Of a stretch of 35,504 bases of DNA, positions 1-31,420 are shown in pieces; positions within the stretch are counted from its first letter, which is position 1, and each line of letters begins with the position of its first letter. This DNA comes from Macrostomum lignano. Taxonomy: Eukaryota. The translations under genes and the position numbers were made by a program. The stretch spans positions 125,564 through 161,067 of the forward strand of contig NIVC01003057.1 in assembly GCA_002269645.1 (NCBI GenBank), read 5' to 3'. Under the pieces are notes generated by a model. That model searched no databases and was not told where the DNA came from. It worked only from the letters and a program-made list of their open reading frames with translations.

Positions 1-230
1 CTCAGAAGAGACTACACTACTTAACTGAAAGTAGTTTAATAGCACATGCACGGACGGAGTTACAGTATTTATGCTTCTCGGGAATCATTTCTACGAGTTT
101 AAAAGTATTATAAGAGATAATACTACTTACTAAAAATAAAAGTAGTTTATTAGCACATGCGCATAGTTTTTTCATTCCTAATAATCGCACAATCGTTTTC
201 TCCCTACCCTCACTGCCTTGTCTGCGCCAG

Positions 231-327
231 CTGGAACGATCCATTGAACCAGTCCGTGACTGAACGAATTGTCAGCCAAATTGTTGCCACAACGCCTGAC
301 ATTCCGTGTCTCCAGACGACTGGCGAA
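231..327 (+). CDS. Constitutive internal exon upstream of the alternative-exon array (uncharacterised, C14orf93-like gene)
   Basis: Acceptor CGCCAG|C at 230 and donor GAA|GTGAGT at 328. Reads WNDPLNQSVTERIVSQIVATTPDIP.... As assembled it ends in phase 0 (..CLQTTGE). One base restored at CC 304-305 gives ..DIPVSPDDWR+A, and one restored at G328 gives ..TTGE+G. Either yields the phase 1 the downstream exons require. Confidence 0.65.
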
Positions 328-406
328 GTGAGTGCAGCTCCATTTTGAATGTGTATAAAAATTAATTGTGTGATTTGTATATATGTAGATATTGAAACAT
401 TGGCGC

Positions 407-425
407 GTAGCATTTGCAGAGGTTT
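407..425 (+). promoter_or_regulatory. Putative intronic docking site GTAGCATTTGCAGAGGTTT
   Basis: About 80 nt after the 328 donor. Reverse-complementary (with G-U pairs) to a motif found once in front of each of the seven alternative exons. Confidence 0.75.
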
Positions 426-615
426 ACAACCCCCAGTTACTGTTTCATTATTATTAATAATAGTATTATTATTACTATCCTCATCCTCAAAATGAGAGCC
501 TGATACTCTCTTGACACACTGATGAACCATTAATTGTATGAATTAATTAACTAATTAAAGCATTAATTGGCCTGTTAACAATGCATAGTGCCGAGCATTA
601 ACAACAATAATAATT

Positions 616-630
616 CCACTGCAAATTCTA
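616..630 (+). promoter_or_regulatory. Selector 1 (CCACTGCAAATTCTA)
   Basis: 13 of 15 positions pair with docking 408-422. Confidence 0.7.
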
Positions 631-662
631 ATGACATTTAAGGTCAGTCAGTCTCTATGCAG

Positions 663-781
663 TTCTAAAGCCTATTCGCATTTTTGCAGCCCAAATGCTC
701 AGACTATGGGAAGAATAGCATCCAAGGCGCGATGTACAGTTGAAAAAGCTTAGAGACAGGAAATATTGTCGAGTGAAAAGA
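663..781 (+). CDS. Alternative exon X1 (5' boundary uncertain; in-frame TAG as assembled)
   Basis: Donor AGA|GTAAGT at 782; ends ..LKKLRDRKYCRVKR. Phase-1 acceptors at 662 or 689. In-frame TAG at 716-718. Confidence 0.55.
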
Positions 782-834
782 GTAAGTTAAGCAGTATGAG
801 GAAATATATATTAATTTAGCCTTAAAAACTACTG

Positions 835-851
835 CCGTGTGCAAATGATAC
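835..851 (+). promoter_or_regulatory. Selector 2 (CCGTGTGCAAATGATAC)
   Basis: TGCAAATG pairs perfectly with docking CATTTGCA, with further flanking pairs on both sides. Confidence 0.55.
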
Positions 852-938
852 TACTGCCCGCGTGAATCTAAAACTCAGCCAAAAACAACATTAATTTATG
901 CTACCTATTAACTCTACACTGAAACACTTGGACTGTAG

Positions 939-1039
939 AACTGTGCAGTCAGTTAATCGGGCAGCTAATGAGCAATCCGTCTGGCAGAAATCTTGATTTG
1001 AAACGTCAGACCATGAGAAAGTGCGGCAGATTGCGCACC
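939..1039 (+). CDS. Alternative exon X2
   Basis: CTGTAG|AA acceptor, ACC|GTAAGA donor, 101 nt = 2+33 codons, open: LCSQLIGQLMSNPSGRNLDLKRQTMRKCGRLRT. Confidence 0.7.
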
Positions 1040-1240
1040 GTAAGACACTTTTGCTACTTACAGGGGTGGGAACTCCGGCCCCCCGGCCCTGTGACACTTA
1101 ACTCTCTTTCTCTCGCCTCTCCACTCTCCTCTCCTATCCCCTTTTCTCCTCTCTCTTATCTCTTGTGTCTCTAGTAAAAACGTTTGCCGACCCCTGTGCC
1201 ACTAGAAGATTCTGTAGCCGTTTGTTATTCCTGCTTTCGC

Positions 1241-1257
1241 AATCCTCTGCGAACTGC
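1241..1257 (+). promoter_or_regulatory. Selector 3 (AATCCTCTGCGAACTGC)
   Basis: CCTCTGCGAA pairs 10/10 (one G-U) with docking TTTGCAGAGG; TGC extends the pairing after a 1-nt bulge. Confidence 0.7.
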
Positions 1258-1347
1258 ATTATCGTTGCGCTAATAAAAAGAATCCGAAGCAATGCTTAGT
1301 AGTATGTGTTGGGCATGGTGATGTCTCTCTATCTGATAAATTTGCAG

Positions 1348-1448
1348 GCAAATGTGCCGTAGCAATATTCACCCCGCTGCATAGGGAGACGGTTGTCAAG
1401 CACGAGGATAGGAAGCGGGTTAAACGAAAATATTCCCGAGTTTCCGCT
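1348..1448 (+). CDS. Alternative exon X3
   Basis: TTTGCAG|GC acceptor, GCT|GTAAGT donor, 101 nt = 2+33 codons, open: KCAVAIFTPLHRETVVKHEDRKRVKRKYSRVSA. Confidence 0.8.
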
Positions 1449-1501
1449 GTAAGTTGACCTTGATTTCTAAGAAATAAGCCAAACCCTCGCCCTCACCGTT
1501 T

Positions 1502-1511
1502 CCTCTGCGAA
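1502..1511 (+). promoter_or_regulatory. Selector 4 (CCTCTGCGAA)
   Basis: 10/10 pairing (one G-U) with docking 413-422. Confidence 0.7.
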
Positions 1512-1584
1512 AGTCGCCGACATTTGTATACAAAATAAATAAAGCACAACTAATTTTGTTTTAAACTGTCAATCCTATCTGTAG

Positions 1585-1695
1585 TTCGATGCAATTTGAA
1601 CATTTTTTGACAATTCCGCGTCAATGAAAAGCGACGCCGTGTTGAAATACGAGGCCAGAAAACGGTCAATGCGTAAATATGCCAGAGTTAGCTCT
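1585..1695 (+). CDS. Alternative exon X4 (one extra T in the 1603-1608 run)
   Basis: CTGTAG|TT acceptor, TCT|GTAAGT donor. Removing one T gives RCNLNIFDNSASMKSDAVLKYEARKRSMRKYARVSS, clearly homologous to X3 at both ends. Confidence 0.7.
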
Positions 1696-1740
1696 GTAAG
1701 TAGTATATGCTTGGGGAAATTGTCCACTAACACTTGAACA

Positions 1741-1754
1741 AGATCTCTGCAAAT
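1741..1754 (+). promoter_or_regulatory. Selector 5 (AGATCTCTGCAAAT)
   Basis: 14/14 pairing (two G-U) with docking 412-425. Confidence 0.75.
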
Positions 1755-1855
1755 TAAACCACAAGTGCCCGTTAACCACCAAAGTTTCACTGTGTACTTT
1801 TTATTGGGTTGGAATGCTTATTTTACTTTAAACACTTGCAATTAATGATGTCTAG

Positions 1856-1950
1856 GCGGTATAGACGAATTTGTGCGCACCGTTTTGGACGAAGAGATGC
1901 GCAATATTAAATCGCGCGGTTATAAACGGCGCTATAGCCGTATTACTGCG
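1856..1950 (+). CDS. Alternative exon X5
   Basis: GTCTAG|GC acceptor, GCG|GTAAGT donor, 95 nt = 2+31 codons, open: GIDEFVRTVLDEEMRNIKSRGYKRRYSRITA. Confidence 0.8.
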
Positions 1951-1971
1951 GTAAGTCTCATTAACCCGGGG

Positions 1972-2400
1972 GTGTGTGTGTGTGTGTGTGTGTCTGCCTG
2001 TCTGTGTATGTGTCTGCCTGTCTGTGTATGTGTCTGTCTGTCTGGCTGTCTGTCTGTCTTAGTGTCTGTCTGTCTATCTGCCTCTGTCTGTCTGTCTGTC
2101 TGTGTAGTGTCTGTCTGTCTGTGTGTCTGTCTGCCTGTCTGTCTGTCTGTGTATGTGTCTGTCTATCTTGTCTGTCTGTGTGTCTGTCTGTCTCTGTGTG
2201 TGTGTCTGTCTGTTTGCCTGTGTGTCTGTCTGTTTGCCTGTCTGTCTGTCTGTCTGTTTGCCTGTCTGCCTGTTTATCTGTCTGTCTGCCTGTCTGTCTG
2301 CCTGTCTATCTGTCTGTCTGTCTGTCTTAGTGCCTGTGTGTCTGTCTGTCTTAGTGTCTGTATGTCTGCCCGCCTGTCTGTTTGCTTGTCTGTCTGTCTA
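1972..2400 (+). repeat. (GT)n plus degenerate (TGTC)n microsatellite in the X5-X6 intron
   Basis: Direct reading. Produces the spurious CLSV-rich ORFs 1974-2410. Confidence 0.95.
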
Positions 2401-2518
2401 TTGGCGTTAACCTATGTATTAAAAATCCAAGCCCTACCTAGGCTGTCTGTATTTAGAGTATATAGAAAACTGGGCAAATTAGAAATTCATTTAGGCCACT
2501 GAGAAGTCCTTTTTTCTC

Positions 2519-2534
2519 AACCTCTGCTAGTCGC
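2519..2534 (+). promoter_or_regulatory. Selector 6 (AACCTCTGCTAGTCGC)
   Basis: AACCTCTGC pairs 9/9 with docking GCAGAGGTT. Confidence 0.7.
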
Positions 2535-2619
2535 TTTCCGTTGTGTATTTAACTTTTATTTGCTGGTTTTGAGTGTTTTTACTTACTATACTCCAATATA
2601 ACTATGCGGTTCTGACTAG

Positions 2620-2729
2620 GACTACTGTACCATATAATGTTTGACGATGGCCGCTACACTGGTAGCGAGGGCGGTTCTTGTACCAAAAATCGACTCAAAT
2701 ATTGGCGTCGTTATAGGCGAATCTCTACA
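2620..2729 (+). CDS. Alternative exon X6
   Basis: GACTAG|GA acceptor, ACA|GTAAGT donor, 110 nt = 2+36 codons, open: LLYHIMFDDGRYTGSEGGSCTKNRLKYWRRYRRIST. Confidence 0.75.
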
Positions 2730-2737
2730 GTAAGTTC

Positions 2738-2745
2738 CCTCTGCA
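2738..2745 (+). promoter_or_regulatory. Selector 7 (CCTCTGCA)
   Basis: 8/8 pairing with docking TGCAGAGG; lies immediately after the X6 donor. Confidence 0.6.
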
Positions 2746-2848
2746 CTTGTCATATCGGCCTAAGCAACAGTTATTATGTTGCTTGCCCTTAGCAACAAAG
2801 ATTTTATATGCTGAGCAATAGTACACAAATACCTTGTATTGCATACAG

Positions 2849-2925
2849 CTTTAATTAAGGAGATATTGTTTACAAAGCAGCGAGCTGATCTGGCCGCCGC
2901 GCGGAAACGCATGCGCGTACGCTGC
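2849..2925 (+). CDS. Alternative exon X7
   Basis: ATACAG|CT acceptor, TGC|GTAAGT donor, 77 nt = 2+25 codons, open: LIKEILFTKQRADLAAARKRMRVRC. Confidence 0.7.
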
Positions 2926-3425
2926 GTAAGTTCAATTGGTCAATCGGCTTTTTTACATTATATATCTACTCAACCCGCTACTGATAGTAATATAATTAAG
3001 TCTGAGCACTTGTTTTAAAGTTTCTTTTTGTCTACAAATTGGAGCTTCATTAGAAACCTGCAAAAAAATCTGAACAATCTGCTTGGACTTTTCTAATTGA
3101 TGTACGTCTAGGTCCCGGGTTCGAATCCGCGTCGCGACTTGCACCTTAGGCCCTGACCACTAATGCATAGTAACTAAAATTTGTGGATATGCTGGGGTGA
3201 AGCGCAATAAATGGAGACTTCTTTCCCAATAGGAGGTTTTTGACAAACTTGACTCCCACTTCTAATTGAATTCCCATTGCTATATAAATTGACAGGGGTG
3301 CGATTCCCCATGAGGGCCAACCCCCACCCCTAAAACAGTGTACATGCCTGATGATTGAAGTGTATGTTCTCAGGATTCATTGCGCACCACCCCCCCCCCC
3401 ATTGCTCGCTCGCCATCCCATGCAG

Positions 3426-3767
3426 AAGCTGTCCCGTCGTCAGAAGGCATTTGAACAAGTCCTGCCATCGCTGAACCCGGACGATCTAGACAAGTATCGA
3501 GTTGTACTATCGCGCGATTTCACTTCGTCAGACGAGGAGACTGAGGACGAATCCACTGGCGAGACGGCCCTGCGAGTTCGAGAACTCGTTTGGGAGTCGG
3601 AGGAGGTCCGCCAGGTGAAGCAGCGGCTAGATCAGACGTTTATGAATCGATTTGCCACGCAGAAGCAGCGAGCCACTCTGCAGCGCTGCATTCGAAACGC
3701 CGGCTGCACGAGTTCGAGGACGCCACCCGCTGAAGCGCCGGACTGGGCTCTGCGAGCTCCCGAGTGA
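3426..3767 (+). CDS. Common terminal exon of the uncharacterised gene (C14orf93-like C-terminal region)
   Basis: ATGCAG|AAG phase-0 acceptor. KLSRRQKAF...DFTSSDEETED...VRELVWES...LD...SSRTPPAEAPDWA then stop. The basic helix / SSDEE acidic patch / W-x-S / LD / SSR-P-P-WA layout recalls C14orf93-like invertebrate proteins (from memory, not searched). Confidence 0.75.
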   Translation, partial: KLSRRQKAFEQVLPSLNPDDLDKYRVVLSRDFTSSDEETEDESTGETALRVRELVWESEEVRQVKQRLDQTFMNRFATQKQRATLQRCIRNAGCTSSRTPPAEAPDWALRAPE

Positions 3768-4038
3768 AAATTGCATTGACTATTTTATTCAAGGGCGACT
3801 TAGCTAGAAGGCAGAGAGCAATATGCTTTGTTTCTTAAAAAAGCTTTGAAGGCTATTTTCTACGCAGAAATCGCTCGATGCAAGCCGGCCTTCAAATATT
3901 TTCTAAGAAAACCCAAAGTTTCCCATCCTCGGACTTCTGTGCTACTGACAGTAGTTTTTTAAGTCAGCTTTTGTCTAAAACGATTTCTTGTATTTAAACT
4001 TGTGGCATCAAATTTGCAATTTGTGTTACACGAAACTT

Positions 4039-4044
4039 AATAAA
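4039..4044 (+). terminator. Candidate polyadenylation signal AATAAA
   Basis: About 270 nt after the TGA at 3767. Confidence 0.4.
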
Positions 4045-4562
4045 TTTGACTGGCAGTTTAAATACCTGGGTGTTGCATTTTGTTGTGTAAGCTGTCGGTG
4101 AACCAGTTACAATTATCTGTAGGATTTCTGCAATCGTTTTTTATGTATATTAACATGTTTTAATTTATAGTAATTCTCGTCTCGCATATATTCTATTCTC
4201 TTGTTTGCACCGATTTTGTTTATAAATAATCAAACAGGTTAACTTTTTACATTTTCTTAACAAGTTGCTACGGCTACAGATTAATGTTAGTGTAATATAT
4301 AAACATGCAGCGCAAAGTGACTTGTCGAAGTTGTCGTTGTCAACATAATCCATACGCTTGTGCATCCTGTTTAATACCTGCCATTATCCAGCTGTACTTC
4401 GTTGAACAAAGCTTGAATACAATACAAGTTTAGTGTTATTCTTAAACAGCAGACCAGAAATTTACTCATGAAGGCACCGTGCTTATTGTCATGCTCGCTA
4501 TTCAATTGTGTCCATTGATGTGTCTTCAGATCTTTAGCTTTTTGTTATTGATGAAAATCGAC

Positions 4563-8184: not shown

Positions 8185-9618
8185 CAGAAGAGATGGGAGA
8201 GGTGAGAGTGAGGGAGAGAAAGTGAGATAGAGGGAAAGTGAATATGAGAGGAATAGAGTTGAGATCGGAGGGAGAGAGTGGAGATGGGAGAGAGGAGATT
8301 GGACGGAGAGTGATGGGAGAGTGGGGATGGGAGAGTGGAGATGGGAGAGTGGGGATAAGAGGGAGAGGAAATGGGAGGGAGAGTGGAGATGGAAGGGAGA
8401 GTGGGGATGGGAGGGAGAGTGGAGATGGGAGAGTGGGGATGGGAGAGTGGGGATGGGAGAGTGGGGATGGGTGAGTGGGGATGGAAGGGAGAGTGGAGAC
8501 GGGAGAGTGGGGATGGGAGGGAGAGTGGAGACGGGAGAGTGGGGATGGGAGAGTGGGATGGGAGAGTGGGATGGGAGAGTGGAGATGGGAGAGTGGGGAT
8601 GGGAGAGTGGAGATGGGAGAGTGGGGATGGGAGAGTGGGGATGGGAGAGTGGAGATGGGAGAGTGGGGATGGGAGAGTGGGGATGGGAGAGTGGAGATGG
8701 GAGAGTGGGGATGGGAGAGTGGGGATGGGAGAGTGGGGATGGGAGAGTGGGGATGGGAGAGTGGGGATGGGAGAGTGGAGATGGGAGAGTGGGGATGGGA
8801 GAGTGGAGATGGGAGAGTGGAGATGGGAGAGTGGGGATGGGAGAGTGGGGATGGGAGAGTGGGGATGGGAGAGTGGGGATGGGAGAGTAGGGATGGGAGA
8901 GTGGAGATCGGAGAGTGGGGATGGGAGAGTGGGGATGGGAGAGTGGGGATGGGAGAGTGGGGATGGGAGAGTGGAGATGGGAGAGTGGAGATGGGAGAGT
9001 GGGGATGGGAGAGTGGGGATGGGAGAGTGGGGATGGGAGAGTGGAGATGGGAGAGTGGGGATGGGAGAGTGGGGATGGATGAGTGGGGATGGAAGGGAGA
9101 GTGGAGACGGGAGAGTGGGGATGGGAGGGAGAGTGGAGACGGGAGAGTGGGGATGGGAGGGAGAGAGGAGATGGGAGGGAGAGTGGGGATGGGAGAGTGG
9201 GGATGGGAGAGTGGAGATGGGAGAGTGGGGATGGGAGAGTGGGGATGGGAGAGTGGGGATGGGAGAGTGGAGATGGGAGAGTGGAGATGGGAGAGTGGGG
9301 ATGGGAGGGAGAGAGGAGATGGGAGGGAGAGTGGGGATGGGAGGGAGAGAGGAGATGGGAGGGAGATGGGAGGGAGAGAGGAGATGGGAGGGAGAGTGGA
9401 GATGGGAGGGAGAGAGGAGATGGGAGGGAGAGTGGAGATGGGAGGGAGAGTGGGGATGGGAGGGAGAGTGGAGATGGGAGGGAGAGTGGGGATGGGAGGG
9501 AGAGTGGGGATGGGAGGGAGAGAGGAGATAGGAGTGAGAGAGTTGAGACGGGAGAGAGGAGATGGGAGGAAGAGAGTTGAGATTGGAAGGAGAGAAGAGA
9601 TGAGAGGAGATGGGAGGC
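8185..9618 (+). repeat. G-rich minisatellite, 14-bp GGGAGAGTGGGGAT with 18-bp GGGAGGGAGAGTGGAGAT variants
   Basis: Direct reading. The overlapping 165-524 aa ORFs in several frames are repeat translations. Confidence 0.95.
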
Positions 9619-15700: not shown

Positions 15701-16169
15701 CTATTGCCTGTTCGAGATTGACCATTTGGTTGCTTTGGTAGAAGGTATTCAGCAATAAAAAGATGAATTCTTGCTTCAATTTATTTCGAGAATATTAGAG
15801 ACTGAACTCATTGAACTCACCAGATGCTGCTTGTACAAAACTCTATGACTCGAACCCCAGCGATTTCAGTTTGCCCTTTGACTCTTAACCCCAGGATATC
15901 ACGACGGTTTCACTGGATAATTCGTTAAACTGTTATTATCTTCCCTATCATGGATAATTTGGGATTTTTGTTCAGTCTGGCAAACAAATTATTGCATGGT
16001 ATGCTTAGCCTACAAGCTTTAGATAATGGAGTTTATCAGCCTGTATATGTGAGAATGAGAACGTTTTAAAACGACTACTATTGCAGAGAGGTTAAATGTC
16101 ATCAGGCGCAGTTGCTTTGATTTTTGATAAGCTGGGTACACAGATGGAGGTGAAGAGATTGAGGTGCAT

Positions 16170-17245
16170 ACAAATTGAGGTTGAAAGGTTGAGGTACACA
16201 GATTGCGGTACATAGATCGAGATACACAGATCGAGATACACAGATCGAGGTACACAGATTGAGGTACACAGATTGAGGTACACAGATTGAGGTACACAGA
16301 TTGAGGTACACAGATCGAGATACACAGATCGAGATACACAGATTGAGGTACACAGATTGAGGTACACAGATTGAGGTACACAGATCGAGATACACAGATC
16401 GAGATACACAGATCGAGATACACAGATCGAGGTACACAGATTGAGGTACACAGATTGAGGTACACAGATTGAGGTACACAGATCGAGATACACAGATCGA
16501 GATACACAGATTGAGGTACACAGATTGAGGTACACAGATTGAGGTACACAGATTGAGGTACACAGATTGAGGTACACAGATCGAGATACACAGATCGAGA
16601 TACACAGATTGAGGTACACAGATTGAGGTACACAGATCGAGATACACAGATCGAGATACACAGATCGAGATACACAGATCGAGATACACAGATCGAGATA
16701 CACAGATCGAGGTACACAGATTGAGGTACACAGATTGAGGTACACAGATTGAGGTACACAGATTGAGGTACACAAATTGAGGTACACAGATCGAGATACA
16801 CAGATCGAGATACACAGATCGAGATACACAGATCGAGATACACAGATCGAGGTACACAGATTGAGGTACACAGATTGAGGTACACAGATTGAGGTACACA
16901 GATTGAGGTACACAGATTGAGGTACACAGATTGAGGTACACAAATTGAGGTACACAGATCGAGATACACAGATCGAGATACACAGATCGAGATACACAGA
17001 TCGAGATACACAGATCGAGGTACACAGATTGAGGTACACAGATTGAGGTACACAGATTGAGGTACACAGATTGAGGTACACAGATTGAGGTACACAGATC
17101 GAGATACACAGATCGAGATACACAGATTGAGGTACACAGATTGAGGTACACAGATTGAGGTACACAGATTGAGGTACACAGATCGAGATACACAGATCGA
17201 GATACACAGATCGAGGTACACAGATTCAGGTACACAGATTGAGGT
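16170..17245 (+). repeat. 14-bp two-variant minisatellite (GATTGAGGTACACA / GATCGAGATACACA)
   Basis: Direct reading. The 371-421 aa minus-strand ORFs are its translations. Confidence 0.95.
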
Positions 17246-17974
17246 ATTTTTCAACAAATGGGCGGAGATGGTCAAAGTCAGCATTTAAAAACCCTGCCAA
17301 GTCTTGAACAGGTCACTTCAAACTGTTTGAGAGGCCGAGAAAGGAGACGGGGAGAGAAAGCCAGTGGCACTTGACCTTATGCCACAAAGCTCTCCATTTC
17401 ACTCTAACAGATGGGTTAATAAAGATATTTTAACAACAACACACAGCTTGGTGAATGACTTGAGAGCACGAGGAGGGAGGGGGTTTTTAATCCGCCGGCC
17501 AGTCATTGCTTTGAAGTTTATTGCGCAAGTGCAACAGTGATCCTAACAGAGTGCGCAATCAGGCTCAAGCCGCCAGTGCACTGTAAACACACCATTAAGG
17601 GTTGAATAATAATGGTAGAGAAGCGGAGACAATGGTCAGTTGCCTCATCCGCAATCGATTGAATTTCTTCTGAGTGACTTTCTGTGTTTTGTTTGCTTTT
17701 TAGGCTAACCCACCACACGTTGAGTGGCCCCTCCGCCCGCCCGCACGCGTTTAAAACTCTACTTAAAAATATTTTAACGGCTGCGGCTGCGGGCGGGTGC
17801 TCAGGGCCACTCAACTCTGCTGGTGGGTCACTTGACTGGCCACCCCAACCTCTGGAGTCCACCTGGCGGCCACTGCTACCCGCTAAACCTCATCCATGGA
17901 GTCCTCGATACAAGAATCTGGACAAATGACTTTGTTATGCCGTTTTTACTAAATTTATCTACACTTATTCAGGA

Positions 17975-19368
17975 AGACTCTAGTTTGTGAAGATTCTACT
18001 TTGTGAAGATTCTATGGCTTTCTGAAGATTCTATGGTTTGTGAAGATTCTATGGCTGTTGAAGATTCTATGGTTTGTGAAGATTCTATGGTTTGTGAAGA
18101 TTCTATGGTTTGTGAAGATTCTATGTTTGTGAAGATTCTATGGTTTGTGAAGATTCTATGTTTGTGAAGATTCTATGGTTTGTGAAGCTTCTATGGTTTG
18201 TGAAGATTCTATGGTTTGTGAAGATTCTATGGTTTTGAAGATTCTATGGTTTTCTGAAGATTCTATGGTTTGTGAAGATTCTATGGTTTGTGAAGATTCT
18301 ATGGTTTGTGAAGATTCTATGGTTTGTGAAGATTCTATGGTTTGTGAAGATTCTATGGCTTTGTGAAGATTCTATGGTTTGTGAAGATTCTATGGTTTGT
18401 GAAGATTCTATGGTTTCTGAAGATTCTATGGTTTGTGAAGATTCTATGGTTTGTGAAGATTCTATGGTTTGTGAAGATTCTATGGTTTGTGAAGATTCTA
18501 TGGTTTGTGAAGATTCTATGGTTTGTGAAGATTCTATGGCTGTTGTGAAGATTCTATGGTTTGTGAAGATTCTATGGTTTCTGAAGATTCTATGGTTTGT
18601 GAAGATTCTATGGTTTGTGAAGATTCTATGGTTTGTGAAGATTCTATGGTTTGTGAAGATTCTATGGTTTGTGAAGATTCTATGGTTTGTGAAGATTATA
18701 TGGTTTGTGAAGATTCTATGGTTTGTGAAGATTCTATGGTTTGTGAAGATTCTATGGTTTGTGAAGATGCTAGGTTTGTGAAGATTCTATTTTGTGAAGA
18801 TGCTAGTTTGTGAAGATTATATTTTGTGAAGATGCTAGTTTGTGAAGATTCTATTTTGTGAAGATGCTAGTTTGTGAAGATGCTAGTTTGTGAAGATTCT
18901 ATTTTGTGAAGATGCTAGTTTGTGAAGATGCTAGTTTTGAAGATTCTATTTTGTGAAGATGCTAGTTTGTGAAGATTCTATTTTGTGAAGATGCTAGTTT
19001 GTGAAGATGCTAGTTTGTGAAGATTCTATTTTGTGAAGATGCTAGTTTGTGAAGATGCTATTTTGTGAAGATGCTAGTTTGTGAAGATGCTAGTTTGTGA
19101 AGATTCTATTTTGTGAAGATGCTAGTTTGTCAATATTCTAGTTTGTGAAGATTCTATTTTGTGAAGATGCTAGTTTGTCAATATTCTAGTTTGTGAAGAT
19201 TCTATTTTGTGAAGATGCTAGTTTGTGAAGATTCTATTTTGTGAAGATGCTAGTTTGTCAATATTCTAGTTTGTGAAGATTCTATTTTGTGAAGATGCTA
19301 GTTTGTGAAGATTCTATTTTGTGAAGATGCTAGTTTGTCAAGATTCTAGTTTGTGAATATTCTAGTTT
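17975..19368 (+). repeat. Compound minisatellite: 18-bp GTTTGTGAAGATTCTATG then 16-bp TTTGTGAAGAT(G/T)CTA(G/T)
   Basis: Unit length switches near 18760-18790. Confidence 0.95.
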
Positions 19369-23887: not shown

Positions 23888-24306
23888 TCATGCTCGGGAC
23901 TTGCCCAGCAGCAGGAGGCCCAGACGGCGCTGGATGTCGGCGGGCAGCGGCGTGTCGGCCAAGGGCGTCGCTGGCTGGACTCGAGCCGCTGTCTATGGCC
24001 GAAAGGGTCAGTGTAGTCGAGAGAGCGCAGCTGCTCGGAGCCGTCCTGTCGGATCTCCAGGAGGCTGCCGTCGCTGAACAGGACCCTGGTGTCGTTGTCG
24101 CTCAGCTGCTGCACATCCGCCACCTGCAGCAGCGGCTGAGTCGGAATTGGAACCGGTGTCGGAGTCGGGGTAGACTTCGATGATGAGGTCGCGGGTTCGA
24201 GCCCCGAATCGGCTGGCGCTCGACCGATAGTGGCGGGGAAGCAGCAGCGGCCCGGCGAGGACAGGGCGGCCAGCGCGGATTCGACTCGTTTCACCTGGTC
24301 GAAGGT
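23888..24306 (-). CDS. PLK4: PLK4 exon 8: end of cryptic polo box, short linker and Polo box 3 (apparent -1 frameshift near 23950-23985)
   Basis: TTCCAG|ACC acceptor. TFDQVKRVESAL..CFPATIGRAP matches the FPIIIGRKP motif. QQLSDNDTRVLFSDGSLL..LDYTDPFG is PB3. The terminal helix PLPADIQRRL..stop lies in a shifted frame. Confidence 0.82.
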
Positions 24307-25153
24307 CTGGAATTAGCAAACGGGTATTAGAAATAATTAGCTCCGGATTTTGGGAAGTTCTTCCCACCCCTAGCGACCAAACCGATTCCCTCATTAGCCA
24401 CCGGAGGGTGAATGACTTGAGCTTGCTTCGGCGAGCAAATTTTGCTCTCTAATCTCAAGAGGATTCTCCATTCGGCTCTCTCTTGTCTCGCCTAAATCCC
24501 ATGCGAAATATGCCTTGACTATATTGCCCGGTCAGATATGGCACGCAGAGGAGGGGAGCTCGCCTTAATGAGACACGCGGCCGCCTCTTCCGCCCGGGAA
24601 TATTGATTAGATGAGGCGGGAATTATTTAGGAGCTGGAGAGAGGGATAAAATTTTGTGGCGCGGCTCGGAATCTATATTGGACCAACAATGGCCACCCGC
24701 ACGGCAACTAATTAAGGCGCTCAGAGCTCTGGGTGTGTCCGGCGCGGGTCAGCCAGCTAGCAACAGAGCTGCCCCCTCCCCCGCCCACCTGAGGGACGGC
24801 CGTGAGCAGTCTCTCAACATCCTCTCTGTGTGAGTGTGGGAGAGCGATTGAGTAAGCGGTTTCACAACACACACAGAGTGAGGGGTGACCTATGGCTACC
24901 AGTCGATCCACCCACCAGCTGTGACGGCCTCACAAAGCTCTCTCCCATCCAGCCTCCAATCTATTCATCCATTATTAGCCCCATCAGTCCAGGGGTTTAA
25001 TTAGCATTGCCGAAATTCAAAGCTATAATATACACACACAGTAACTCGGGGTAGGGCGATTTCGGCAATCAATTTTGGCAAAATCGGGCAAGCGGATGAA
25101 GGCAAAACACTGGACGGGGGGCAGGGATTGTGCTTGATGGGCCGCTGGCTCAC

Positions 25154-26184
25154 CTCATTAACATAATGCAGAATCTCCGCTTCATCTGGCGACAAGCTGC
25201 GCAGCTCGACGGCTTGCCGTCGACTGTCATTCGAAGTCCGCCATTGCGTCGACCTGCCCGACGGCCGTTGTAGAAGTACACGGCAAAGTCGGGCTCCGGG
25301 TCGCTGTTCTCGAACAGCACGCACCTGGCTCGGTCCGTGTGCAGCACAACCTTGGCGGTGTTGCTGCGCAGGATGCTGATGAAGGAGTCTGCGAGTTGGT
25401 AGAGTCGGGCAGCTCGGTCTGGCAGATCCGGGAAGATGAACTTCTCAGCTGATGACCAGTCCAGGCTGTCTTGCTGCTGCTGTTCGCTGATCAGAGCAAC
25501 GTGTCGGCCATCTGGTTCGATTCTCAGCACCCTTCTTGGTGGCGTGGACTTCCTTCCACCGACTTTGAACTGTTCGACTGTGAGGTCACCATCGGCAGTC
25601 AGGCTGAACACGGTCGGGCCCTTGACAACCCGACACGGCTCCAGGCGGGCGGTGCTCAGCGGGTTCTGCGGCAGTCGACGTCCGCGCTGAGAGCCCAGCG
25701 AGGAGGTCGGGTTGGATGAGGCGCAGGACTGCGGACCGTCTGACACGGTGTCGAGAGGCTGCTGATGCTGCTGATGCTGTTGAAGCCTTGGAGCCGCCAC
25801 AGGAGCCGCCTGCGGACCCAGCGGGCTGCCCTCGGACTGGACGGCGCTTGAGTAGCCTTCGCTGTGCCTGGAGTGCCCGGTCAGAACTCCTCCTGTGGCG
25901 GCGGTGGCGGCGTTGCTGGCGGCTCCTCCGGCCTGCCGACCGTCTGAGTGGCACCGCCGCAGGCTGGCGGCCGTCTGCAGATGCGGCGTTGAAGCTGCTG
26001 CTGGCGCCGGTCGATGCTGGCGCTGCTCAACTTGATGAAGCTGAGGCCGGGACAGCGACACGGAGGCCGGAGTTGATGGCGTGGCGACCGATGAGGCGGC
26101 GGCAGGGATGGGGGTGGAGGCGGCCAGACAGTGCGAGCCGCTCTGAACCGAATCGTTGCCCGAATCGTTGCTGGCGCTTCTCTC
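25154..26184 (-). CDS. PLK4: PLK4 exon 7: degron, linker and cryptic polo box PB1-PB2 (apparent -1 frameshift near 25211)
   Basis: TTCTAG|GAG acceptor, GAG|GTGAGC donor. SNDSGNDS degron; NPLSTARLEP, LPDRAARLYQLADSFISILRSNTAKV and CVLFENSDPEPDFAVYFYNG match the PLK4 CPB. Length 1031 nt is one short of a codon multiple. Confidence 0.88.
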
Positions 26185-27254
26185 CTAGAAGATTCGCAGA
26201 ATTGGAACAATTAATAGTTATTGTTGAAGACCGAATGGAGAATGGAAAAATATGATTTTTTTCTCTCTGTGGAACAATTGTCGTTACTCCATTAAATTCT
26301 AATAATAATAACCGCCCCGTTTTGGTTGACGAAGTTCGAAAAATGGACCGGGGGACTGTGATGAGTCCGCTTTTGTTTTGTCCGAACCGAAGCTCAACAA
26401 GTGCCTTGGCAACCAGATTTTTAGAGAGAGAGATAGGGGCTACTGATGGGCACTTGATAGGATTGAACCTCTACACACTTTCATTTCTCACCTGCACTCA
26501 AAACTTTTCCAACGCTCGAGTATCGAGTGCTCAAAAATAGGCGAGAGTGATGCATGGGATACAATCGATCCGCTATTCCCCACCCTCTGCAGTCCATCTG
26601 GTTTCTATAGGGTATGCAACAGCGGCTCTCAAGAGCTGTGAATGGCAGAGTAACAGCATATATAGCATCGGGGTCTATAGATTCTCAAAATATTAAAATA
26701 TAGGAGTTTAATTTTCTTCCCCGCGAATCCTCTCCTCTGCAAGCAACAGCGCTTGTTGCGTCCATTTTGCTTTCATCGCAATCCCTGGTTGCTAGGATGA
26801 CCAGTTGGCCAGTCCCTCTGCTCGCTCGGTCAAGGGAAGCTGAGCTGAGGCATTTCGGCTTTTTAGAATGGCTTTTGAAGGATAATAAATATTTACAATC
26901 GAGGAGGGGGGATCTGGAAGCCGGTGAGAGGAGACGGCGAGCAATCTCTCCCACAGCTCAAAGTCTTACGCAATAAGTTGGTCACTTTTTGTTATACGGC
27001 GTCATCCCCGAGACGGGAGGGCGGACAGACGGGGCTATCGCAACAGCTTAGGAATTCCCATCCATCTCATGCCATGGATACTGGGATCAGGGGGTGTAGG
27101 GGCGTCGTTATCGAAGATAAGACGAAATCCTTCATGTGTTTGGGGGGCGGCTGGCCTCTGTGTGTGATAGAGATTTTGTCTACAGTAGCCACCCACCTGT
27201 CGGCAGATATCGACAAATTCCCTGACAGTGTGACATGATGGCTTCTACCATGGG

Positions 27255-27560
27255 ATCTGTGATGAGTGCCATTTTTGGGATCTGTGATGATGAGTGTCAT
27301 TTTTGGGATCTGTGATGATGAGTGCCATTTTTGGGATCTGTGATAAGTGCCATTTTTGGGATCTGTGATAAGTGCCATTTTTGGGAGCTGTGATAAGTGC
27401 CATTTTTGGGAGCTGTGATAAGTGCCATTTTCGGGATCCGTGATGAGTGCCATTTTTGGGATCGGTGATAAGTGCCATTTTTGGGATCCGTGATGAGTGC
27501 CATTTTTGGGATCTGTGATAAGTGCCATTTTTGGGATCCGTGATGAGTGCCATTTTTGGT
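27255..27560 (+). repeat. 25-bp intronic minisatellite GTGCCATTTTTGGGATCTGTGATAA
   Basis: Direct reading; PLK4 intron 6. Confidence 0.93.
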
Positions 27561-27586
27561 TTTTTGACCTGGCAAAGAGCACTCAC

Positions 27587-27857
27587 ATGCGCCTTGTCCC
27601 GCATAAACGGGTGCTGAAGAACTTGAGCCAGAGTCAGTCGCTCTTTCGGTCTCTCCCGCAGCAGTTTAGCAATCAGGTCGATGGCCTCGGGGTGCAGGCT
27701 GCCCGGGATATCGTACTTCAGCCGTCTGGCGTTGTCTATGGTCGACTTCGGGTCCTTGGTGTCAAACGGCGCCTTGCCAACCAGCATGGTGTACAACATC
27801 ACGCCCAACGACCAGACGTCCACTTCTGGACCTTGCACTCCTTGACTGCTGACCTCC
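27587..27857 (-). CDS. PLK4: PLK4 exon 6: kinase subdomains VIII-XI
   Basis: CTGCAG|G acceptor (phase 2), CAT|GTGAGT donor. PE..DVWSLGVMLYTMLVGKAPFDT...LLRERPKERLTLAQVLQHPFM. Confidence 0.95.
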
Positions 27858-28613
27858 CTGCAGTGGCATGCAAGGTTCAATGTTTGATTGTTTGAAAATA
27901 TGATATCATAAAAATCAAATTGCGCATAGTAAAATTGAAACAATATATAGACTGTTTTTATTGCTCAAATTTCAACAACTGCTCATGTTCACTCATGCAG
28001 CGCGATCTGTCTGGCTGATGTTGGCTGATCTGGATTTTAAGCCAAAGTGTCTACAGAACTGAACTCTGACTTTTCCCCACACTTTGGAAGCGCCAGAGCG
28101 TGCCACCTAAGCTGCGGAACCACAGCAAGATTTCCTCCTTGTCCAGCTGGAGGTGCTGGGGTCTGAAGATTTCGCAACGCCAACGCATCCTGAAGCCGGC
28201 GCTCAAGCCTCGGGGCAAATTTATGGAGAGACATTGAGTAAAAGCAGATTTGTTCTTGAATCTTATTTTGAATCAATTTGTTGGTTTGCCGTCTCGACTG
28301 ACTTGAGCTGACAGCCTTTGCACCTAAACTCATTGGCGGAACCTGACAATCTCTGGCAAGACTGTTAGTCGCAATTCCCGAGGTTCTTCTGCCCGAATTC
28401 ATTGCTAACGAAAAAATCCCAATCAAGCATTGACCCAATCAGGTAGAAAACTGATCAATTAGAAATTCCAGTTGCTCAACGGGATGGTTTTAGAGAGATA
28501 GCGATGGCAAAAATAGTCAGGTTGAACAGATCAATTAGCATAAAATTAGCATTTTTACAACTATGTGTTGTCGGTGTTTTAATTAACAATGTAACGTCGG
28601 CTTGAGAACTCAC

Positions 28614-28699
28614 GGTGAGATGTAGTTTGGAGTGCCGCACATGGTCTTGTTGGTCCGGTCCTCCGACAGTTCAGCGGCTAACCCGAAGTCCGAGATCTT
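28614..28699 (-). CDS. PLK4: PLK4 exon 5: DFG and activation loop
   Basis: CCTGCAG|AAG acceptor, CC|GTGAGT donor. KISDFGLAAELSEDRTNKTMCGTPNYIS. Confidence 0.96.
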
Positions 28700-28744
28700 C
28701 TGCAGGAAAAAAGACAGAAAGAAAAAAATTGTCACTTCCTCTGA

Positions 28745-29075
28745 ACGTTTTGGAAGCGCTGTTTAAGGAGTGCCGTTTTGGGGGCGCCGTTTAGGGAGCG
28801 CCGTTTTGGGGGCGCCGTTTAGGGAATGCCGTTTTGGGGGCACCGTTTAGGGAGCGCCGTTTTGGGAGCGCCGTTTTGGGGGCGCCGTTTAGGGAGTGCC
28901 GTTTTGGCGGCGCCGTTTTGGGGGCGCCGTTTGGGGGCGCCGTTTAGGGAGTGCCGTTTTGGGGGCGCCGTTTAGGGAGTGCCGTTTTGGGGGCGCCGTT
29001 TTGGGGGCACCGTTTTGGGGGCGCCGTTTAGGGAGCGCCGTTTTGAGGGCGTCGTTCTGGGAGCGCCGTTTTTCT
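28745..29075 (+). repeat. About 15-bp intronic minisatellite GGCGCCGTTT(T/A)GGG(G/A)
   Basis: Direct reading; PLK4 intron 4. Confidence 0.92.
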
Positions 29076-29140
29076 GGGGTCGCTAATTACAACACTCTTT
29101 CCTACACACCAAACACCAATTCATACCCAATGCAACTCAC

Positions 29141-29253
29141 CACTTTGCAGTCTTCAGTGAGCAGCAGGTTTGCCAGGGTGAGATCCCTGTGAATGATTCC
29201 GCTCCGATGCAAATAGCACAGGCCAGCAACGATCTGCTTAAGAAAGTAGCGAA
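29141..29253 (-). CDS. PLK4: PLK4 exon 4: catalytic loop
   Basis: TTGTAG|TT acceptor, GTG|GTGAGT donor. RYFLKQIVAGLCYLHRSGIIHRDLTLANLLL; HRDLTL is PLK4-type (PLK1-3 have HRDLKL). Confidence 0.96.
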
Positions 29254-29353
29254 CTACAAAAGAATGGTTTTGGGGTGATGTTTTTTTTAATTATTGATTG
29301 ATAGATTCCTTGATTTACGCTTCTAAACTGTTGGGACTATCGCTCGGACTAAC

Positions 29354-29465
29354 CTTTGTCTTCGCTAAGACAGCCATTGCGTCGTACATAGTCGTGCAGA
29401 TTTCCGCCCTGGCACAGTTCCAGCACAATGTAGACATTGGCGGTGTCCTCAAAGTATGAGTAGAG
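29354..29465 (-). CDS. PLK4: PLK4 exon 3: hinge region
   Basis: CTGCAG|CTC acceptor, G|GTTAGT donor. [37 protein letters not shown]. Confidence 0.95.
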
Positions 29466-30252
29466 CTGCAGTGTGTGGCGCATGTGTGTGGGGTGGAGTT
29501 TTTAGTTACCGGCGATAGAACATGTGATGGAGTATACGGGATAGCAAAACTGTCACCACAGACTCTTTAAAAACCGCTTGACCACCCACTGGCTGATTAA
29601 AGAAGCGCCATTGCGCTCCACTTGAAGAGCATTCCAAGCAAAAGCCAACATCAACGCGCTATCTGTCTTCACTGACCAGCTGCCGAGAGTAATCGAGGTG
29701 TCACTGAACTGTTGATTAATTTAATTATTTAAAGAATTTGCTCAACACCCCTACCCCCCATACTATTCAGTCTACCTGAGTCTACCACTTGAAAATCTCT
29801 TTTTAACGAATCGGTAGGGTAAAGACACACCTGCATAGGCCATGGGTACCAAGGGACTGCATGTGAGGCGGGAATGCTGCATGCATTTTTCTGTTAGAAG
29901 CTTTTGCTTACTCTAGGTCACTCAGTGTGTACACAATCCTTCGTCTCAACTCTCGTGCCATTTTCTCTCTTTCCTTCTCTTCAACGTTTCACTGCACTCT
30001 GCTGCGCATGGGATGTACACTTGCTGTACAGTGTGCCTCTCTCTGTCTACTCACCTGCAAGCAGGCTGGCTCTCTCTCTGCCTCACCCGTCCACCTCATC
30101 TCCTGCTACTGCAGGAAAGACTGCCTGTCTGTCTGACTAAGCAAGAGCGCACTGAGTTATCTTTCCTGCCTATGCTATAGTTCTATTGAAATCTAGCACA
30201 AAGCACCGAGTTCCAGCAGTGTTAGATTAGTTTGAGTTCAAATTTTGCTCAC

Positions 30253-31390: not shown

Positions 31391-31420
31391 TGAAAAAGTA
31401 TAAACTAAAAAAGTTCTCAC

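What the first reader, a model, noticed from the sequence alone, without database searches (positions are those of the whole stretch)
407..2745. One docking site plus seven selector sequences: Dscam1-style competing RNA pairing
Seen: intronic GTAGCATTTGCAGAGGTTT (407-425) is complementary to exactly one motif in front of each alternative exon. These are 616-630 (13/15), 835-851 (8-bp perfect core), 1241-1257 (10/10 plus extension), 1502-1511 (10/10), 1741-1754 (14/14), 2519-2527 (9/9) and 2738-2745 (8/8). Six sit about 70-105 nt before their acceptor. Exact CCTCTGC occurs 4 times in about 2.5 kb, against about 0.15 expected under uniform base composition. Established: docking-selector pairing drives mutually exclusive choice in the Drosophila Dscam1 exon 6 cluster. 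Inference: an independently evolved instance in a gene family unrelated to Dscam, probably outside arthropods.
Basis: partly seen in the sequence, partly recalled or inferred. Interest (0 to 1): 0.95.

Follow-up and report, generated by a model that had tools for sequence, protein, structure and literature searches.

The report
Flatworm docking-selector alternative splicing switch
A gene of the flatworm Macrostomum lignano carries seven tandem alternative exons, each preceded by a short intronic sequence complementary to one shared upstream "docking" sequence, which is the RNA-pairing layout that picks one exon at a time in insect Dscam1, here in a different phylum and an unrelated gene family.

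Summary
No experiment has tested it.

The window comes from Macrostomum lignano (Platyhelminthes). It holds the 3' part of an uncharacterised gene. After constitutive exon E0 (231-327) come seven tandem variant exons, all with length = 2 mod 3, and then a constitutive last exon.

A blind scan of all 3079 19-mers in the locus ranks the proposed docking site (402-425) first for pairing with the 130 nt before the seven acceptors. No selector precedes the last exon.

Across four near-identical genomic copies, docking plus selectors vary at 1 of 109 columns. Other intron sequence varies at 8.7%.

Paralogues repeat the layout. One has a related docking site and co-varying selectors. Two use a completely different docking sequence: in one, 7 of 7 variant exons have a matching selector, in the other 8 of 11. 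A single-variant paralogue has one docking:selector stem.

Annotated proteins use variant A5 or A2, one at a time.

Still missing are RNA-seq proof of mutual exclusivity and mutational tests. This is a new member of a known kind. I found no report of it outside arthropods and vertebrates in the searched literature.

The parts
231..327 (+). Constitutive exon E0 (WNDPLNQ...DDWR); 5' splice site GTGAGT at 328
   Evidence: Strong acceptor and donor. In the other three copies E0 is 98 nt and ends one base into a codon, in phase with the variants. The window copy lacks one T (TTT->TT), most likely an assembly indel. E0 is present in annotated proteins P0001 and P0006.
402..425 (+). Docking site GGCGC(G)GTAGCATTTGCAGAGGTTT, 74-97 nt after the E0 donor; the core GCAGAGG at 416-422 is unique in the locus
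   Evidence: Top-ranked of 3079 19-mers. 0 of 1000 shuffles reach it. Invariant in four copies except one G indel at its 5' edge. The block TTGCAGAGGTTTACA is the best local match between the otherwise unalignable first introns of two paralogues. The 14-mer has 9 genome hits, 8 of them in these two gene groups.
616..630 (+). Selector S1 (weakest, 13/15), 74 nt before A1
   Evidence: one A/G difference, at a position that is already mismatched. Duplex only about -15 kcal/mol.
690..781 (+). Variant exon A1 (92 nt); decaying or pseudo-exon
   Evidence: In-frame TAG in the window and L008, TAA in L009, open only in L010. L009 also has a 3.7-kb TIR-flanked insertion between S1 and A1.
835..851 (+). 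Selector S2 (TGCAAATG core), 104 nt before A2
   Evidence: -22.9 kcal/mol. Invariant in four copies.
939..1039 (+). Variant exon A2 (101 nt; LCSQLIGQLMSNPSGRNLDLKRQTMRKCGRLRT)
   Evidence: Open in the shared frame. Used in UniProt models P0002 and P0007.
1241..1257 (+). Selector S3 (CCTCTGCGAA...), 107 nt before A3
   Evidence: -25.7. Invariant.
1348..1448 (+). Variant exon A3 (101 nt; KCAVAIFTPLHRETVVKHEDRKRVKRKYSRVSA)
   Evidence: Open frame; identical in four copies.
1502..1511 (+). Selector S4 (CCTCTGCGAA), 83 nt before A4
   Evidence: -23.6. Invariant.
1585..1695 (+). Variant exon A4 (110 nt in three copies; the window copy has one extra base)
   Evidence: Intact as RCNLTFFDNSASMKSDAVLKYEARKRSMRKYARVSS in L008, L009 and L010.
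1741..1754 (+). Selector S5 (AGATCTCTGCAAAT, 14 bp with two G:U), 115 nt before A5
   Evidence: -23.8. Invariant.
1856..1950 (+). Variant exon A5 (95 nt; GIDEFVRTVLDEEMRNIKSRGYKRRYSRITA)
   Evidence: The only variant in annotated full-length proteins P0001 and P0006.
2519..2527 (+). Selector S6 (AACCTCTGC), 101 nt before A6
   Evidence: -22.6. Invariant.
2620..2729 (+). Variant exon A6 (110 nt)
   Evidence: Open frame; identical in four copies.
2738..2745 (+). Selector S7 (CCTCTGCA), 8 nt after the A6 donor and 111 nt before A7
   Evidence: -23.8. Invariant.
2849..2925 (+). Variant exon A7 (77 nt)
   Evidence: Open frame.
3426..3767 (+). Constitutive last coding exon (KLSRRQKAF...APE, stop at 3765-3767); no selector in the intron before it
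   Evidence: The encoded domain is conserved in about 26 paralogue groups and in other invertebrate phyla.
533..557 (+). AT-rich block (ATTGTATGAATTAATTAACTAATTA) between docking and S1; role unknown, membership uncertain
   Evidence: It is the second-best local match between the introns of paralogues (16/17 with L016, 14/15 with L013). It could be chance in AT-rich sequence.

Best explanation
This is a docking-site/selector (competing RNA pairing) system that chooses among tandem alternative exons of one M. lignano gene.

Proposed mechanism (inferred): in the pre-mRNA, the docking site lies 74-97 nt after the E0 5' splice site. It can pair with only one of seven selectors, because every selector uses the same docking core (GCAG at 416-419). 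Pairing loops out the variants in between and places the acceptor about 75-115 nt downstream of the paired selector close to the E0 donor. That variant is then spliced to E0, and afterwards to the last exon.

All variants have length = 2 mod 3. Skipping all of them, or including two, therefore shifts the frame of the last exon, so reading frame and probably NMD act as a second filter (inferred).

Shown here: the anatomy, the statistical excess of complementarity, the sequence constraint, the covariation across paralogues, and the use of A5 or A2 alone in annotated models.

Not shown: that pairing forms in vivo, that it causes the choice, and how variants downstream of the chosen one are kept out.
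For: 1. Anatomy. There are seven homologous variant exons in one phase, and six are intact in the intact copies. Each has one selector 74-115 nt upstream. None precedes the constitutive last exon.

2. Blind scan. The docking site ranks first of 3079 19-mers, with z = -5.2 against shuffles. The same scan on the regions after the donors finds no site that stands out.

3. Only the selector blocks are shared. The flanks of the seven units do not align. Footprints are staggered along the docking site: S1, S2 and S5 extend into CAAAT, while S3, S4, S6 and S7 extend into (A/T)CC. One protein-binding motif would not give that pattern.

4. Constraint. Across four genomic copies about 6% diverged, 1 of 109 docking and selector columns varies, against 162 of 1860 other intron columns and 21 of 1127 exon columns. 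My hand-calculated binomial P is about 6e-4.

5. Paralogue L016 (contig C1).
- Its docking site is TATAGCGTTGCAGAGGTTTACA, about 100 nt after the E0 donor.
- It has its own selectors 90-95 nt before variant acceptors.
- The cognate docking site binds better than the other gene's in 12 of 13 selectors.
- Three stem positions show compensatory swaps: U:A to G:C, A:U to C:G, and C:G to G:C. There are 19 double-change cells against 11.5 +/- 2.3 in shuffles (0 of 500 reach it).

6. A second, unrelated docking sequence, GGTCTGGAAACGTCGCAAG.
- It was found blind in the paralogue on contig C127, where 8 of 11 tandem 77-nt exons have complementary selectors (z = -4.8).
- In the paralogue on C586 (L019), 7 of 7 exons have selectors 77-145 nt upstream.
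- Its 16-mer has 9 exact genome hits, all in three paralogue groups.

7. The single-variant paralogue L013 has a perfect 13-bp stem: AACGTTGCAGAGG pairs with CCTCTGCAACGTT, which lies about 75 nt before the acceptor.

8. Annotated proteins include exactly one variant: A5 in P0001 and P0006, A2 in P0002 and P0007.
Against: - No RNA-seq or long-read data were available, so mutual exclusivity rests on four gene models. The two A2 models retain the following intron.
- S1 is weak and A1 is a pseudo-exon in three copies.
- In paralogue L016, the annotated isoform (P0011) uses the exon at 3791, which has no detectable selector (-9.3 kcal/mol).
- Three of 11 exons in the C127 gene lack a selector for the docking site.
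- G-rich 19-mers reach -16.6 in the scan, so energy alone does not separate cleanly.
- Rows of the covariation table share docking sites. They represent only 2-3 independent lineages.
- The four copies are only about 6% diverged, which limits the power of the constraint test.
- No repressor, or other means of skipping the variants downstream of the chosen one, was identified.
Confidence: 0.8

Rival explanations
1. The pairing is real and selected, but its role is general. It would bridge the intron or activate the cluster (for example by bringing distant acceptors near the E0 donor, as in the single-exon paralogue) rather than enforce one-at-a-time choice. Exclusivity would then come mainly from reading frame and NMD.
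For: The single-variant paralogue L013 keeps a perfect docking:selector stem although there is nothing to choose between. All variants have length = 2 mod 3, so frame alone removes double inclusion. A gene model with two variants in tandem and a shifted frame exists (P0025).
Against: All selectors compete for the same few docking bases, so only one stem can form per transcript. Clusters of 7-11 variants each keep their own selector. This rival overlaps heavily with the main model.
Confidence: 0.12
2. The shared CCTCTGC/TGCAAAT blocks are binding sites for a splicing regulator placed before each variant exon. Their complementarity to 407-425 would be incidental.
For: A pyrimidine-rich motif at a fixed distance before acceptors could be a protein site. 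CTCTGC is common to 5 of 7 windows.
Against: Different selectors match different, overlapping stretches of the docking site, including parts that lack the common core. The docking site is itself conserved and unique. Paralogues changed docking site and selectors together. Other paralogues use a wholly different sequence pair that is still complementary.
Confidence: 0.04
3. The repeats are neutral leftovers of the tandem duplications that made the exon array and have no present function.
For: Exon arrays arise by tandem duplication that copies flanking intron sequence (Ivanov and Pervouchine 2018, PMC6071210).
Against: The variant peptides are highly diverged and the intron flanks no longer align, yet the selector blocks persist. 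Variable columns are 1 of 109 against 8.7% in neighbouring intron. The docking block is the only significant match between the introns of paralogues.
Confidence: 0.04

Closest known systems
Drosophila/pancrustacean Dscam1 exon 6 cluster (docking site after exon 5, one selector before each exon 6 variant; Graveley 2005 as summarised in PMC6071210 and PMC12962786)
   Same: The topology matches: a single docking site in the intron just downstream of the upstream constitutive exon, and one selector upstream of every tandem homologous variant. Selector footprints are staggered and overlap on one docking core. Docking site and selectors are conserved islands in otherwise diverged introns.
   Different: The phylum is Platyhelminthes and the gene is an uncharacterised non-Ig family. 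There are 7 variants (7-11 in paralogues) rather than 48. Selectors sit at a tight 74-115 nt from the acceptor. All variants have length = 2 mod 3, so frame gives a back-up filter. No hrp36-like repressor, locus control region or balancer structures have been identified. There is no experimental test.
Insect 14-3-3 xi/zeta, Mhc, MRP1 and Dscam1 exon 4/9 clusters (competing pairings with a downstream docking site; PMC6071210, PMC4691838)
   Same: Competing intronic pairings are associated with tandem mutually exclusive exons outside Dscam exon 6. This shows the principle is reused in unrelated genes.
   Different: In those genes the docking site lies downstream of the cluster, or the pairing is bidirectional. 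Here a scan for a downstream docking site found nothing.
Stem-loop duplication model for the origin of competing structures (Ivanov and Pervouchine 2018, PMC6071210)
   Same: The family contains what looks like every stage. L013 has one exon with one intronic stem. Other paralogues have clusters in which one arm plus the exon is multiplied and the other arm stays single.
   Different: The model was derived from fly and human annotations. Here it would be played out among paralogues of one flatworm family. The direction of change (gain or loss of variants) was not resolved.
Mammalian ATE1 exons 7a/7b (competing intronic elements R1-R5; PMC7797038)
   Same: An example outside arthropods of competing RNA structures controlling mutually exclusive exons.
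   Different: ATE1 has only two exons and several interacting element pairs. It is not a one-docking, many-selector array.

Membership tests
Docking-site/selector competing-RNA mutually exclusive exon cluster (Dscam1 exon 6 type) | Tandem array of homologous alternative exons of similar length and the same phase, between two constitutive exons | tested here: met
   Seven exons of 77-110 nt, all with length = 2 mod 3. They share the C-terminal motif R-[KR]-[YC]-x-R-[VIL]. They are flanked by E0 and the last exon.
Docking-site/selector competing-RNA mutually exclusive exon cluster (Dscam1 exon 6 type) | A single docking site in the intron next to a constitutive exon | tested here: met
   402-425, 74-97 nt after the E0 donor. 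It is unique in the locus, is the top hit of the blind scan, and no second site lies downstream.
Docking-site/selector competing-RNA mutually exclusive exon cluster (Dscam1 exon 6 type) | One selector complementary to the docking site in front of each variant and none before the constitutive exon | tested here: met
   7 of 7 variants have one, and the last intron has none. S1 is weak.
Docking-site/selector competing-RNA mutually exclusive exon cluster (Dscam1 exon 6 type) | Selector footprints overlap on the docking site, so only one pairing can form at a time | tested here: met
   The selector strings each cover the complement of the docking bases GCA(G) at 416-419, and the predicted duplexes for A2-A7 include the 411-423 core; for A1 the lowest-energy duplex uses a different site (568-595), not S1.
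Docking-site/selector competing-RNA mutually exclusive exon cluster (Dscam1 exon 6 type) | Evolutionary conservation and covariation of docking site and selectors | tested here: met
   Within the genome only. Variable columns are 1 of 109 against 8.7% among four copies. There is covariation with paralogue L016. A different complementary pair is used in other paralogues. Other species could not be examined.
Docking-site/selector competing-RNA mutually exclusive exon cluster (Dscam1 exon 6 type) | Exactly one variant per mature mRNA | tested here: inconclusive
   Four annotated models carry one variant each (A5 twice, A2 twice with a retained intron). No RNA-seq data were available. The frame logic is consistent with single inclusion.
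Docking-site/selector competing-RNA mutually exclusive exon cluster (Dscam1 exon 6 type) | Disrupting the pairing changes variant choice and compensatory mutation restores it | not testable with these tools
   Needs a minigene or transgenic experiment.
Docking-site/selector competing-RNA mutually exclusive exon cluster (Dscam1 exon 6 type) | Accessory components of the fly system (hrp36 repressor, locus control region, balancer pairings; PMC12962786) | not tested
   Only 74 nt lie between the E0 donor and the docking site. An AT-rich conserved block at 533-557 is unexplained.
BEN domain proteins (the label UniProt gives A0A1I8HGZ8 = P0007) | Match to the BEN domain profile or fold | tested here: not met
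   No Pfam family at E <= 1 apart from a spurious Fer4_22 hit. None in ten homologues. No PDB sequence hit. Foldseek of the AF2 model against the PDB finds nothing at E < 1.
Dscam / Ig-superfamily receptors | Ig and FN3 domains | tested here: not met
   No Pfam domains. The predicted fold is mostly helical.

The most novel reading that the evidence does not exclude
This may not be one gene but a whole lineage-expanded flatworm gene family that diversifies one long helix of a conserved, uncharacterised bilaterian domain. The family has about 26 paralogue groups. At least five of them carry docking/selector clusters, using two unrelated docking sequences. On this reading, docking-selector exon choice arose (or spread) independently of arthropods and has been retuned gene by gene. 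The family preserves the evolutionary series from a single intronic stem-loop to arrays of 7-11 exons. It would make M. lignano, which has transgenesis, a second and simpler experimental system for this mechanism.
Probability: 0.55. Interest if true: 0.85.

Novelty: new member of a known kind. Interest (0 to 1): 0.72.

Why it matters
Arrays with one docking site and many selectors are textbook for arthropod Dscam1 and a few other insect genes. Full-text searches of the available literature found no report in flatworms or other Lophotrochozoa.

An independent instance in a distant phylum matters for three reasons:
- It shows that the solution is convergent or general rather than an arthropod oddity.
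- Its small clusters (7 variants in 2.6 kb) are far easier to dissect than the 48 variants of Dscam exon 6.
- Its paralogues offer natural experiments: two docking sequences, compensatory changes, and a single-stem relative. These bear directly on the proposed origin by duplication of one arm of a stem-loop.

It also flags an uncharacterised protein family, conserved in brachiopods, annelids, echinoderms and hemichordates, in which one helix is deliberately diversified.

Tried and rejected
- Prokaryotic reading. ORF lists show only repeats and split exons; the locus is eukaryotic.
- Downstream or bidirectional docking site. The scan of the 110 nt after each donor gave only GC-rich exonic 19-mers, so this was rejected.
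- Known ncRNA. There are no Rfam matches in 1-4200 and no tRNA.
- BEN-domain identity. Not supported.
- Transcript isoforms or orthologues in the protein databases. A 179-aa query spanning E0, a variant and the last exon returned only P0002. The full-length search returned only M. lignano proteins.
- Frameshifts in the window copy. I first read E0 (97 nt) and A4 (111 nt) as out of frame. Comparison with three other copies shows the window has single-base indels. Against L008 it differs by 1 substitution and 16 indel columns, mostly single-base, so these are most likely assembly errors and not biology.
- Paralogue L020 (three candidate exons). The blind scan gave only GC-rich hits, so no docking site was called there.
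- Replicating the constraint test on homeologues of the paralogues.
Full report
**Observation**

GTAGCATTTGCAGAGGTTT (407-425) is complementary to one short block in each of seven downstream introns: S1 616-630, S2 835-851, S3 1241-1257, S4 1502-1511, S5 1741-1754, S6 2519-2527 and S7 2738-2745. CCTCTGC occurs four times between 1244 and 2738 and three times in the remaining ~32 kb. The docking core GCAGAGG occurs once in the locus.

**What the locus is**

The window is contig C3057:125564-161067 of a 764-Mb assembly. Protein searches identify the organism as the free-living flatworm Macrostomum lignano.

The region 231-3767 is the 3' part of a plus-strand gene. Its first coding exon lies just upstream of the window and is seen in the 99.5%-identical copy L008 (contig C420). 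The gene model has these parts:
- Exon 1: about 248 codons, starting MATAVLPPPP.
- E0: 231-327.
- One of seven variant exons: A1 690-781, A2 939-1039, A3 1348-1448, A4 1585-1695, A5 1856-1950, A6 2620-2729, A7 2849-2925.
- A last exon: 3426-3767.

All variants have good acceptors and GTAAG donors, and their length is 2 mod 3. They are read in the same phase and share a basic C-terminal motif such as ...RKYSRVSA or ...RRYSRITA.

The window copy has single-base indels in E0, A4 and the 5' edge of the docking site. Against L008 it differs by 1 substitution and 16 indel columns, mostly single-base. The other three copies are in frame. I therefore treat these differences as assembly errors.

A1 has an in-frame stop in three of four copies and is open only in L010. 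In L009 a 3.7-kb TIR-flanked insertion separates it from S1. A1 looks like a decaying variant, and it also has the weakest selector.

Annotated proteins contain exactly one variant. PAA83431 (P0001) and PAA69508 (P0006) use A5. UniProt A0A1I8HZA2 (P0002) and A0A1I8HGZ8 (P0007) use A2, followed by retained intron.

**Is the complementarity more than chance?**

- I scanned every 19-mer in 328-3425 against the 130 nt before each of the seven acceptors, without using the proposed site. Positions 402-410 take the nine best ranks. The best mean is -18.8 kcal/mol, against a background of -9.2 +/- 2.25. The next candidates are G-rich exonic 19-mers at -16.6.
- None of 1000 shuffles of the docking 19-mer reaches the observed mean or the observed weakest-window value (z = -5.2).
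- The k-mers most widely shared among the seven windows are all fragments of the docking complement. The flanks do not align.
- With the 24-nt docking site, A2-A7 give -22.6 to -25.7 kcal/mol. The selector starts 84-116 nt before the acceptor. The window before the constitutive last exon gives -16.1 as a scattered structure.
- The same scan on the sequence after each donor finds no site that stands out. There is a single, upstream docking site.
- No Rfam family or tRNA matches the region.

**Constraint**

M. lignano carries four copies of this locus: the window, L008 at 99.5% identity, and L009 and L010 at about 94%. In their alignment, variable columns number:
- 1 of 109 in docking site plus selectors;
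- 21 of 1127 in exons;
- 162 of 1860 in the remaining intron, with the (TGTC)n array excluded.

By my own binomial arithmetic, 1 or fewer in 109 at a rate of 0.087 has P of about 6e-4. The single change (S1, A to G in L010) falls on a position that is already mismatched.

**Paralogues: the strongest evidence**

The last-exon peptide has 78 matches in the genome, about 26 paralogue groups of 2-4 copies each.

*(a) L016, contig C1.* It has at least six candidate variant exons of 86-95 nt.
- The blind scan again returns, as its top hit, a site about 100 nt after the E0 donor: TATAGCGTTGCAGAGGTTTACA.
- Its strongest partners lie 90-95 nt before variant acceptors: CAAGCCTCTACAACGCGATG and GAAACCTCTTTGACGCTATGG.
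- TTGCAGAGGTTTACA is the best local match between the first introns of the two genes (15/15), at +87 and +109 nt from the donor.
- The 14-mer has nine exact hits in 764 Mb. Eight are in these two gene groups.
- Where the two docking sites differ (GCATTTG against GCGTTG), the selectors differ in step (CAAAT against CAACGC).
- The cognate docking site is the stronger partner for 12 of 13 selectors.
- In a hand-built alignment of docking-selector pairs, three stem positions show swaps on both sides: U:A to G:C, A:U to C:G, and C:G to G:C. There are 19 double-change cells against 11.5 +/- 2.3 in shuffles (0 of 500). The covariation score is 0.242, against 0.06-0.11 when the partner is slid.
- Caveat: rows share docking sites, so these represent few independent events.

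*(b) The gene on contig C127.* It has at least 11 tandem 77-nt variants.
- The blind scan returns an unrelated docking site, GGTCTGGAAACGTCGCAAG.
- Eight of the 11 pre-acceptor windows carry staggered complements such as GCAGCGTTTCCAGA, CTTGCGATGTTTTCC and TAGCGACGTTTTCAG.
- 0 of 600 shuffles reach the observed value.

*(c) The gene on contig C586 (L019).* It has the same docking site and seven 77-nt variants. Each has a selector 77-145 nt upstream. Seven of the eight hits at or below -17 kcal/mol in 3.7 kb are these selectors. The 16-mer CTGGAAACGTCGCAAG has nine exact genome hits, all in three paralogue groups.

*(d) L013.* This paralogue has a single exon at this position. It has a perfect 13-bp stem: AACGTTGCAGAGG pairs with CCTCTGCAACGTT, which lies about 75 nt before the acceptor.

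Complementarity is thus preserved while the sequence changes, partly in one lineage and completely in another.

**Mechanism**

Shown here:
- one docking site;
- seven competing selectors with overlapping footprints;
- a fixed selector-acceptor spacing;
- sequence constraint;
- covariation;
- single-variant gene models.

Inferred by analogy with Dscam1 exon 6 (PMC6071210; PMC12962786):
- Pairing of one selector with the docking site loops out the upstream variants. It brings the next acceptor close to the E0 donor and so activates that variant.
- Because every variant has length 2 mod 3, and E0 ends one base into a codon, zero or two variants shift the frame of the last exon. Frame and probably NMD therefore act as a back-up filter.

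Unknown: how variants downstream of the chosen one are skipped. In flies this involves the repressor hrp36.

Complications:
- The annotated isoform of L016 (P0011) uses a variant with no detectable selector.
- Three distal variants of the C127 gene lack selectors for the docking site.
- S1/A1 is decaying.

**The protein**

- No Pfam family matches the protein or ten homologues.
- No PDB sequence matches the family profile.
- AlphaFold2 with a 37-sequence alignment gives a confident C-terminal half (residues 215-428, pLDDT about 90). The variant exon forms the central part of a long helix, 279-330.
- Foldseek against the PDB finds nothing at E < 1.
- The UniProt label "BEN domain-containing" is therefore not supported here.
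- Weaker homologues of the C-terminal region are "uncharacterized" proteins of Lingula, Owenia, Acanthaster, Patiria and Glandiceps.
- This is an old bilaterian family, much expanded in Macrostomum. It is unrelated to Dscam.

**Comparison and novelty**

The topology is that of Dscam1 exon 6: an upstream docking site and a selector before each variant. It is not that of 14-3-3, Mhc, MRP1 or Dscam exon 4/9, where the docking site is downstream or the pairing is bidirectional.

Differences from Dscam1 exon 6:
- the phylum and the gene family;
- the small cluster size;
- the tight selector spacing;
- variant lengths that are not a multiple of three;
- no accessory elements identified.

Full-text searches found no report of such a system in Macrostomum, flatworms or Lophotrochozoa. 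Absence from that library is not proof of absence.

I rate this a new member of a known kind. Its added value is a paralogue series, from single stem to 7-11 variants with two docking codes, that fits the stem-loop duplication model of Ivanov and Pervouchine.

**Limits**

- No transcriptome data, other Macrostomum genomes or experiments were available.

Noticed in passing
window 24000-31650, minus strand: A PLK4 (polo-like kinase 4) gene. It has kinase-domain exons at about 31.1-31.6 kb and 27.2-28.0 kb, and Plk4 polo-box 1 and 2 at 25.15-26.18 kb. Minisatellites sit in its introns.
   Followed up: partly
window about 291, about 406, about 1598 and 13 other positions in 201-3800: Against the C420 copy, the window copy differs by 1 substitution and 16 indel columns, almost all single-base, many of them in short same-base runs. 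Two of them frameshift E0 and A4. These look like long-read assembly errors, or a very recent duplicate, rather than real lesions.
   Followed up: yes
window 690-781 (A1); L009 1769-5439: Variant A1 is dying. It has different in-frame stops in different copies and is open only in L010. One copy has a 3.7-kb insertion with CAGTGTTCCCAC...GTGGGAACACTG terminal inverted repeats between S1 and A1.
   Followed up: partly
window 533-557: [quoted passage not shown] It recurs, with one mismatch, at a similar place in paralogues L016 and L013. It may be a second conserved element or may be chance.
   Followed up: no
L016 3791-3876 (contig C1, minus strand): The only annotated isoform of this paralogue (P0011) uses a variant exon that has no detectable selector for the docking site. 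It may be a default exon.
   Followed up: no
L019 6143-7399; C127 gene variants: Many variants in the second docking family have weak, non-consensus donors (GTACGC, GTGCGT, GTTAGT, GTCAGT, GTTGGT, GTAATT). The variants in the window all have GTAAG donors (GTAAGT, or GTAAGA for A2). One gene model (P0025) strings two 77-nt variants together and runs out of frame.
   Followed up: no
window 1975-2399 and more than 15 other arrays (e.g. 8274-9568, 16135-17246, 17983-19364, 33353-34515): The window is very rich in micro- and minisatellites (periods of 4-48 nt, up to about 100 copies). One of them is the (TGTC)n array inside the A5-A6 intron. It accounts for that intron's length and for spurious duplex hits there.
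   Followed up: partly
window 3100-3140: A fragment resembling a tRNA T-arm (GGTCCCGGGTTCGAATCCGCGTCGCGAC) lies in the last intron. It may be a SINE remnant. ARAGORN calls no tRNA.
   Followed up: partly
L008 1286-2934 (about 2-3.5 kb upstream of the gene's start codon): A ribosomal protein L21e-like gene (my identification from the ORF translation, not tool-tested), followed by a roughly 500-bp proline/serine-rich tandem repeat, lies immediately upstream of exon 1.
   Followed up: no
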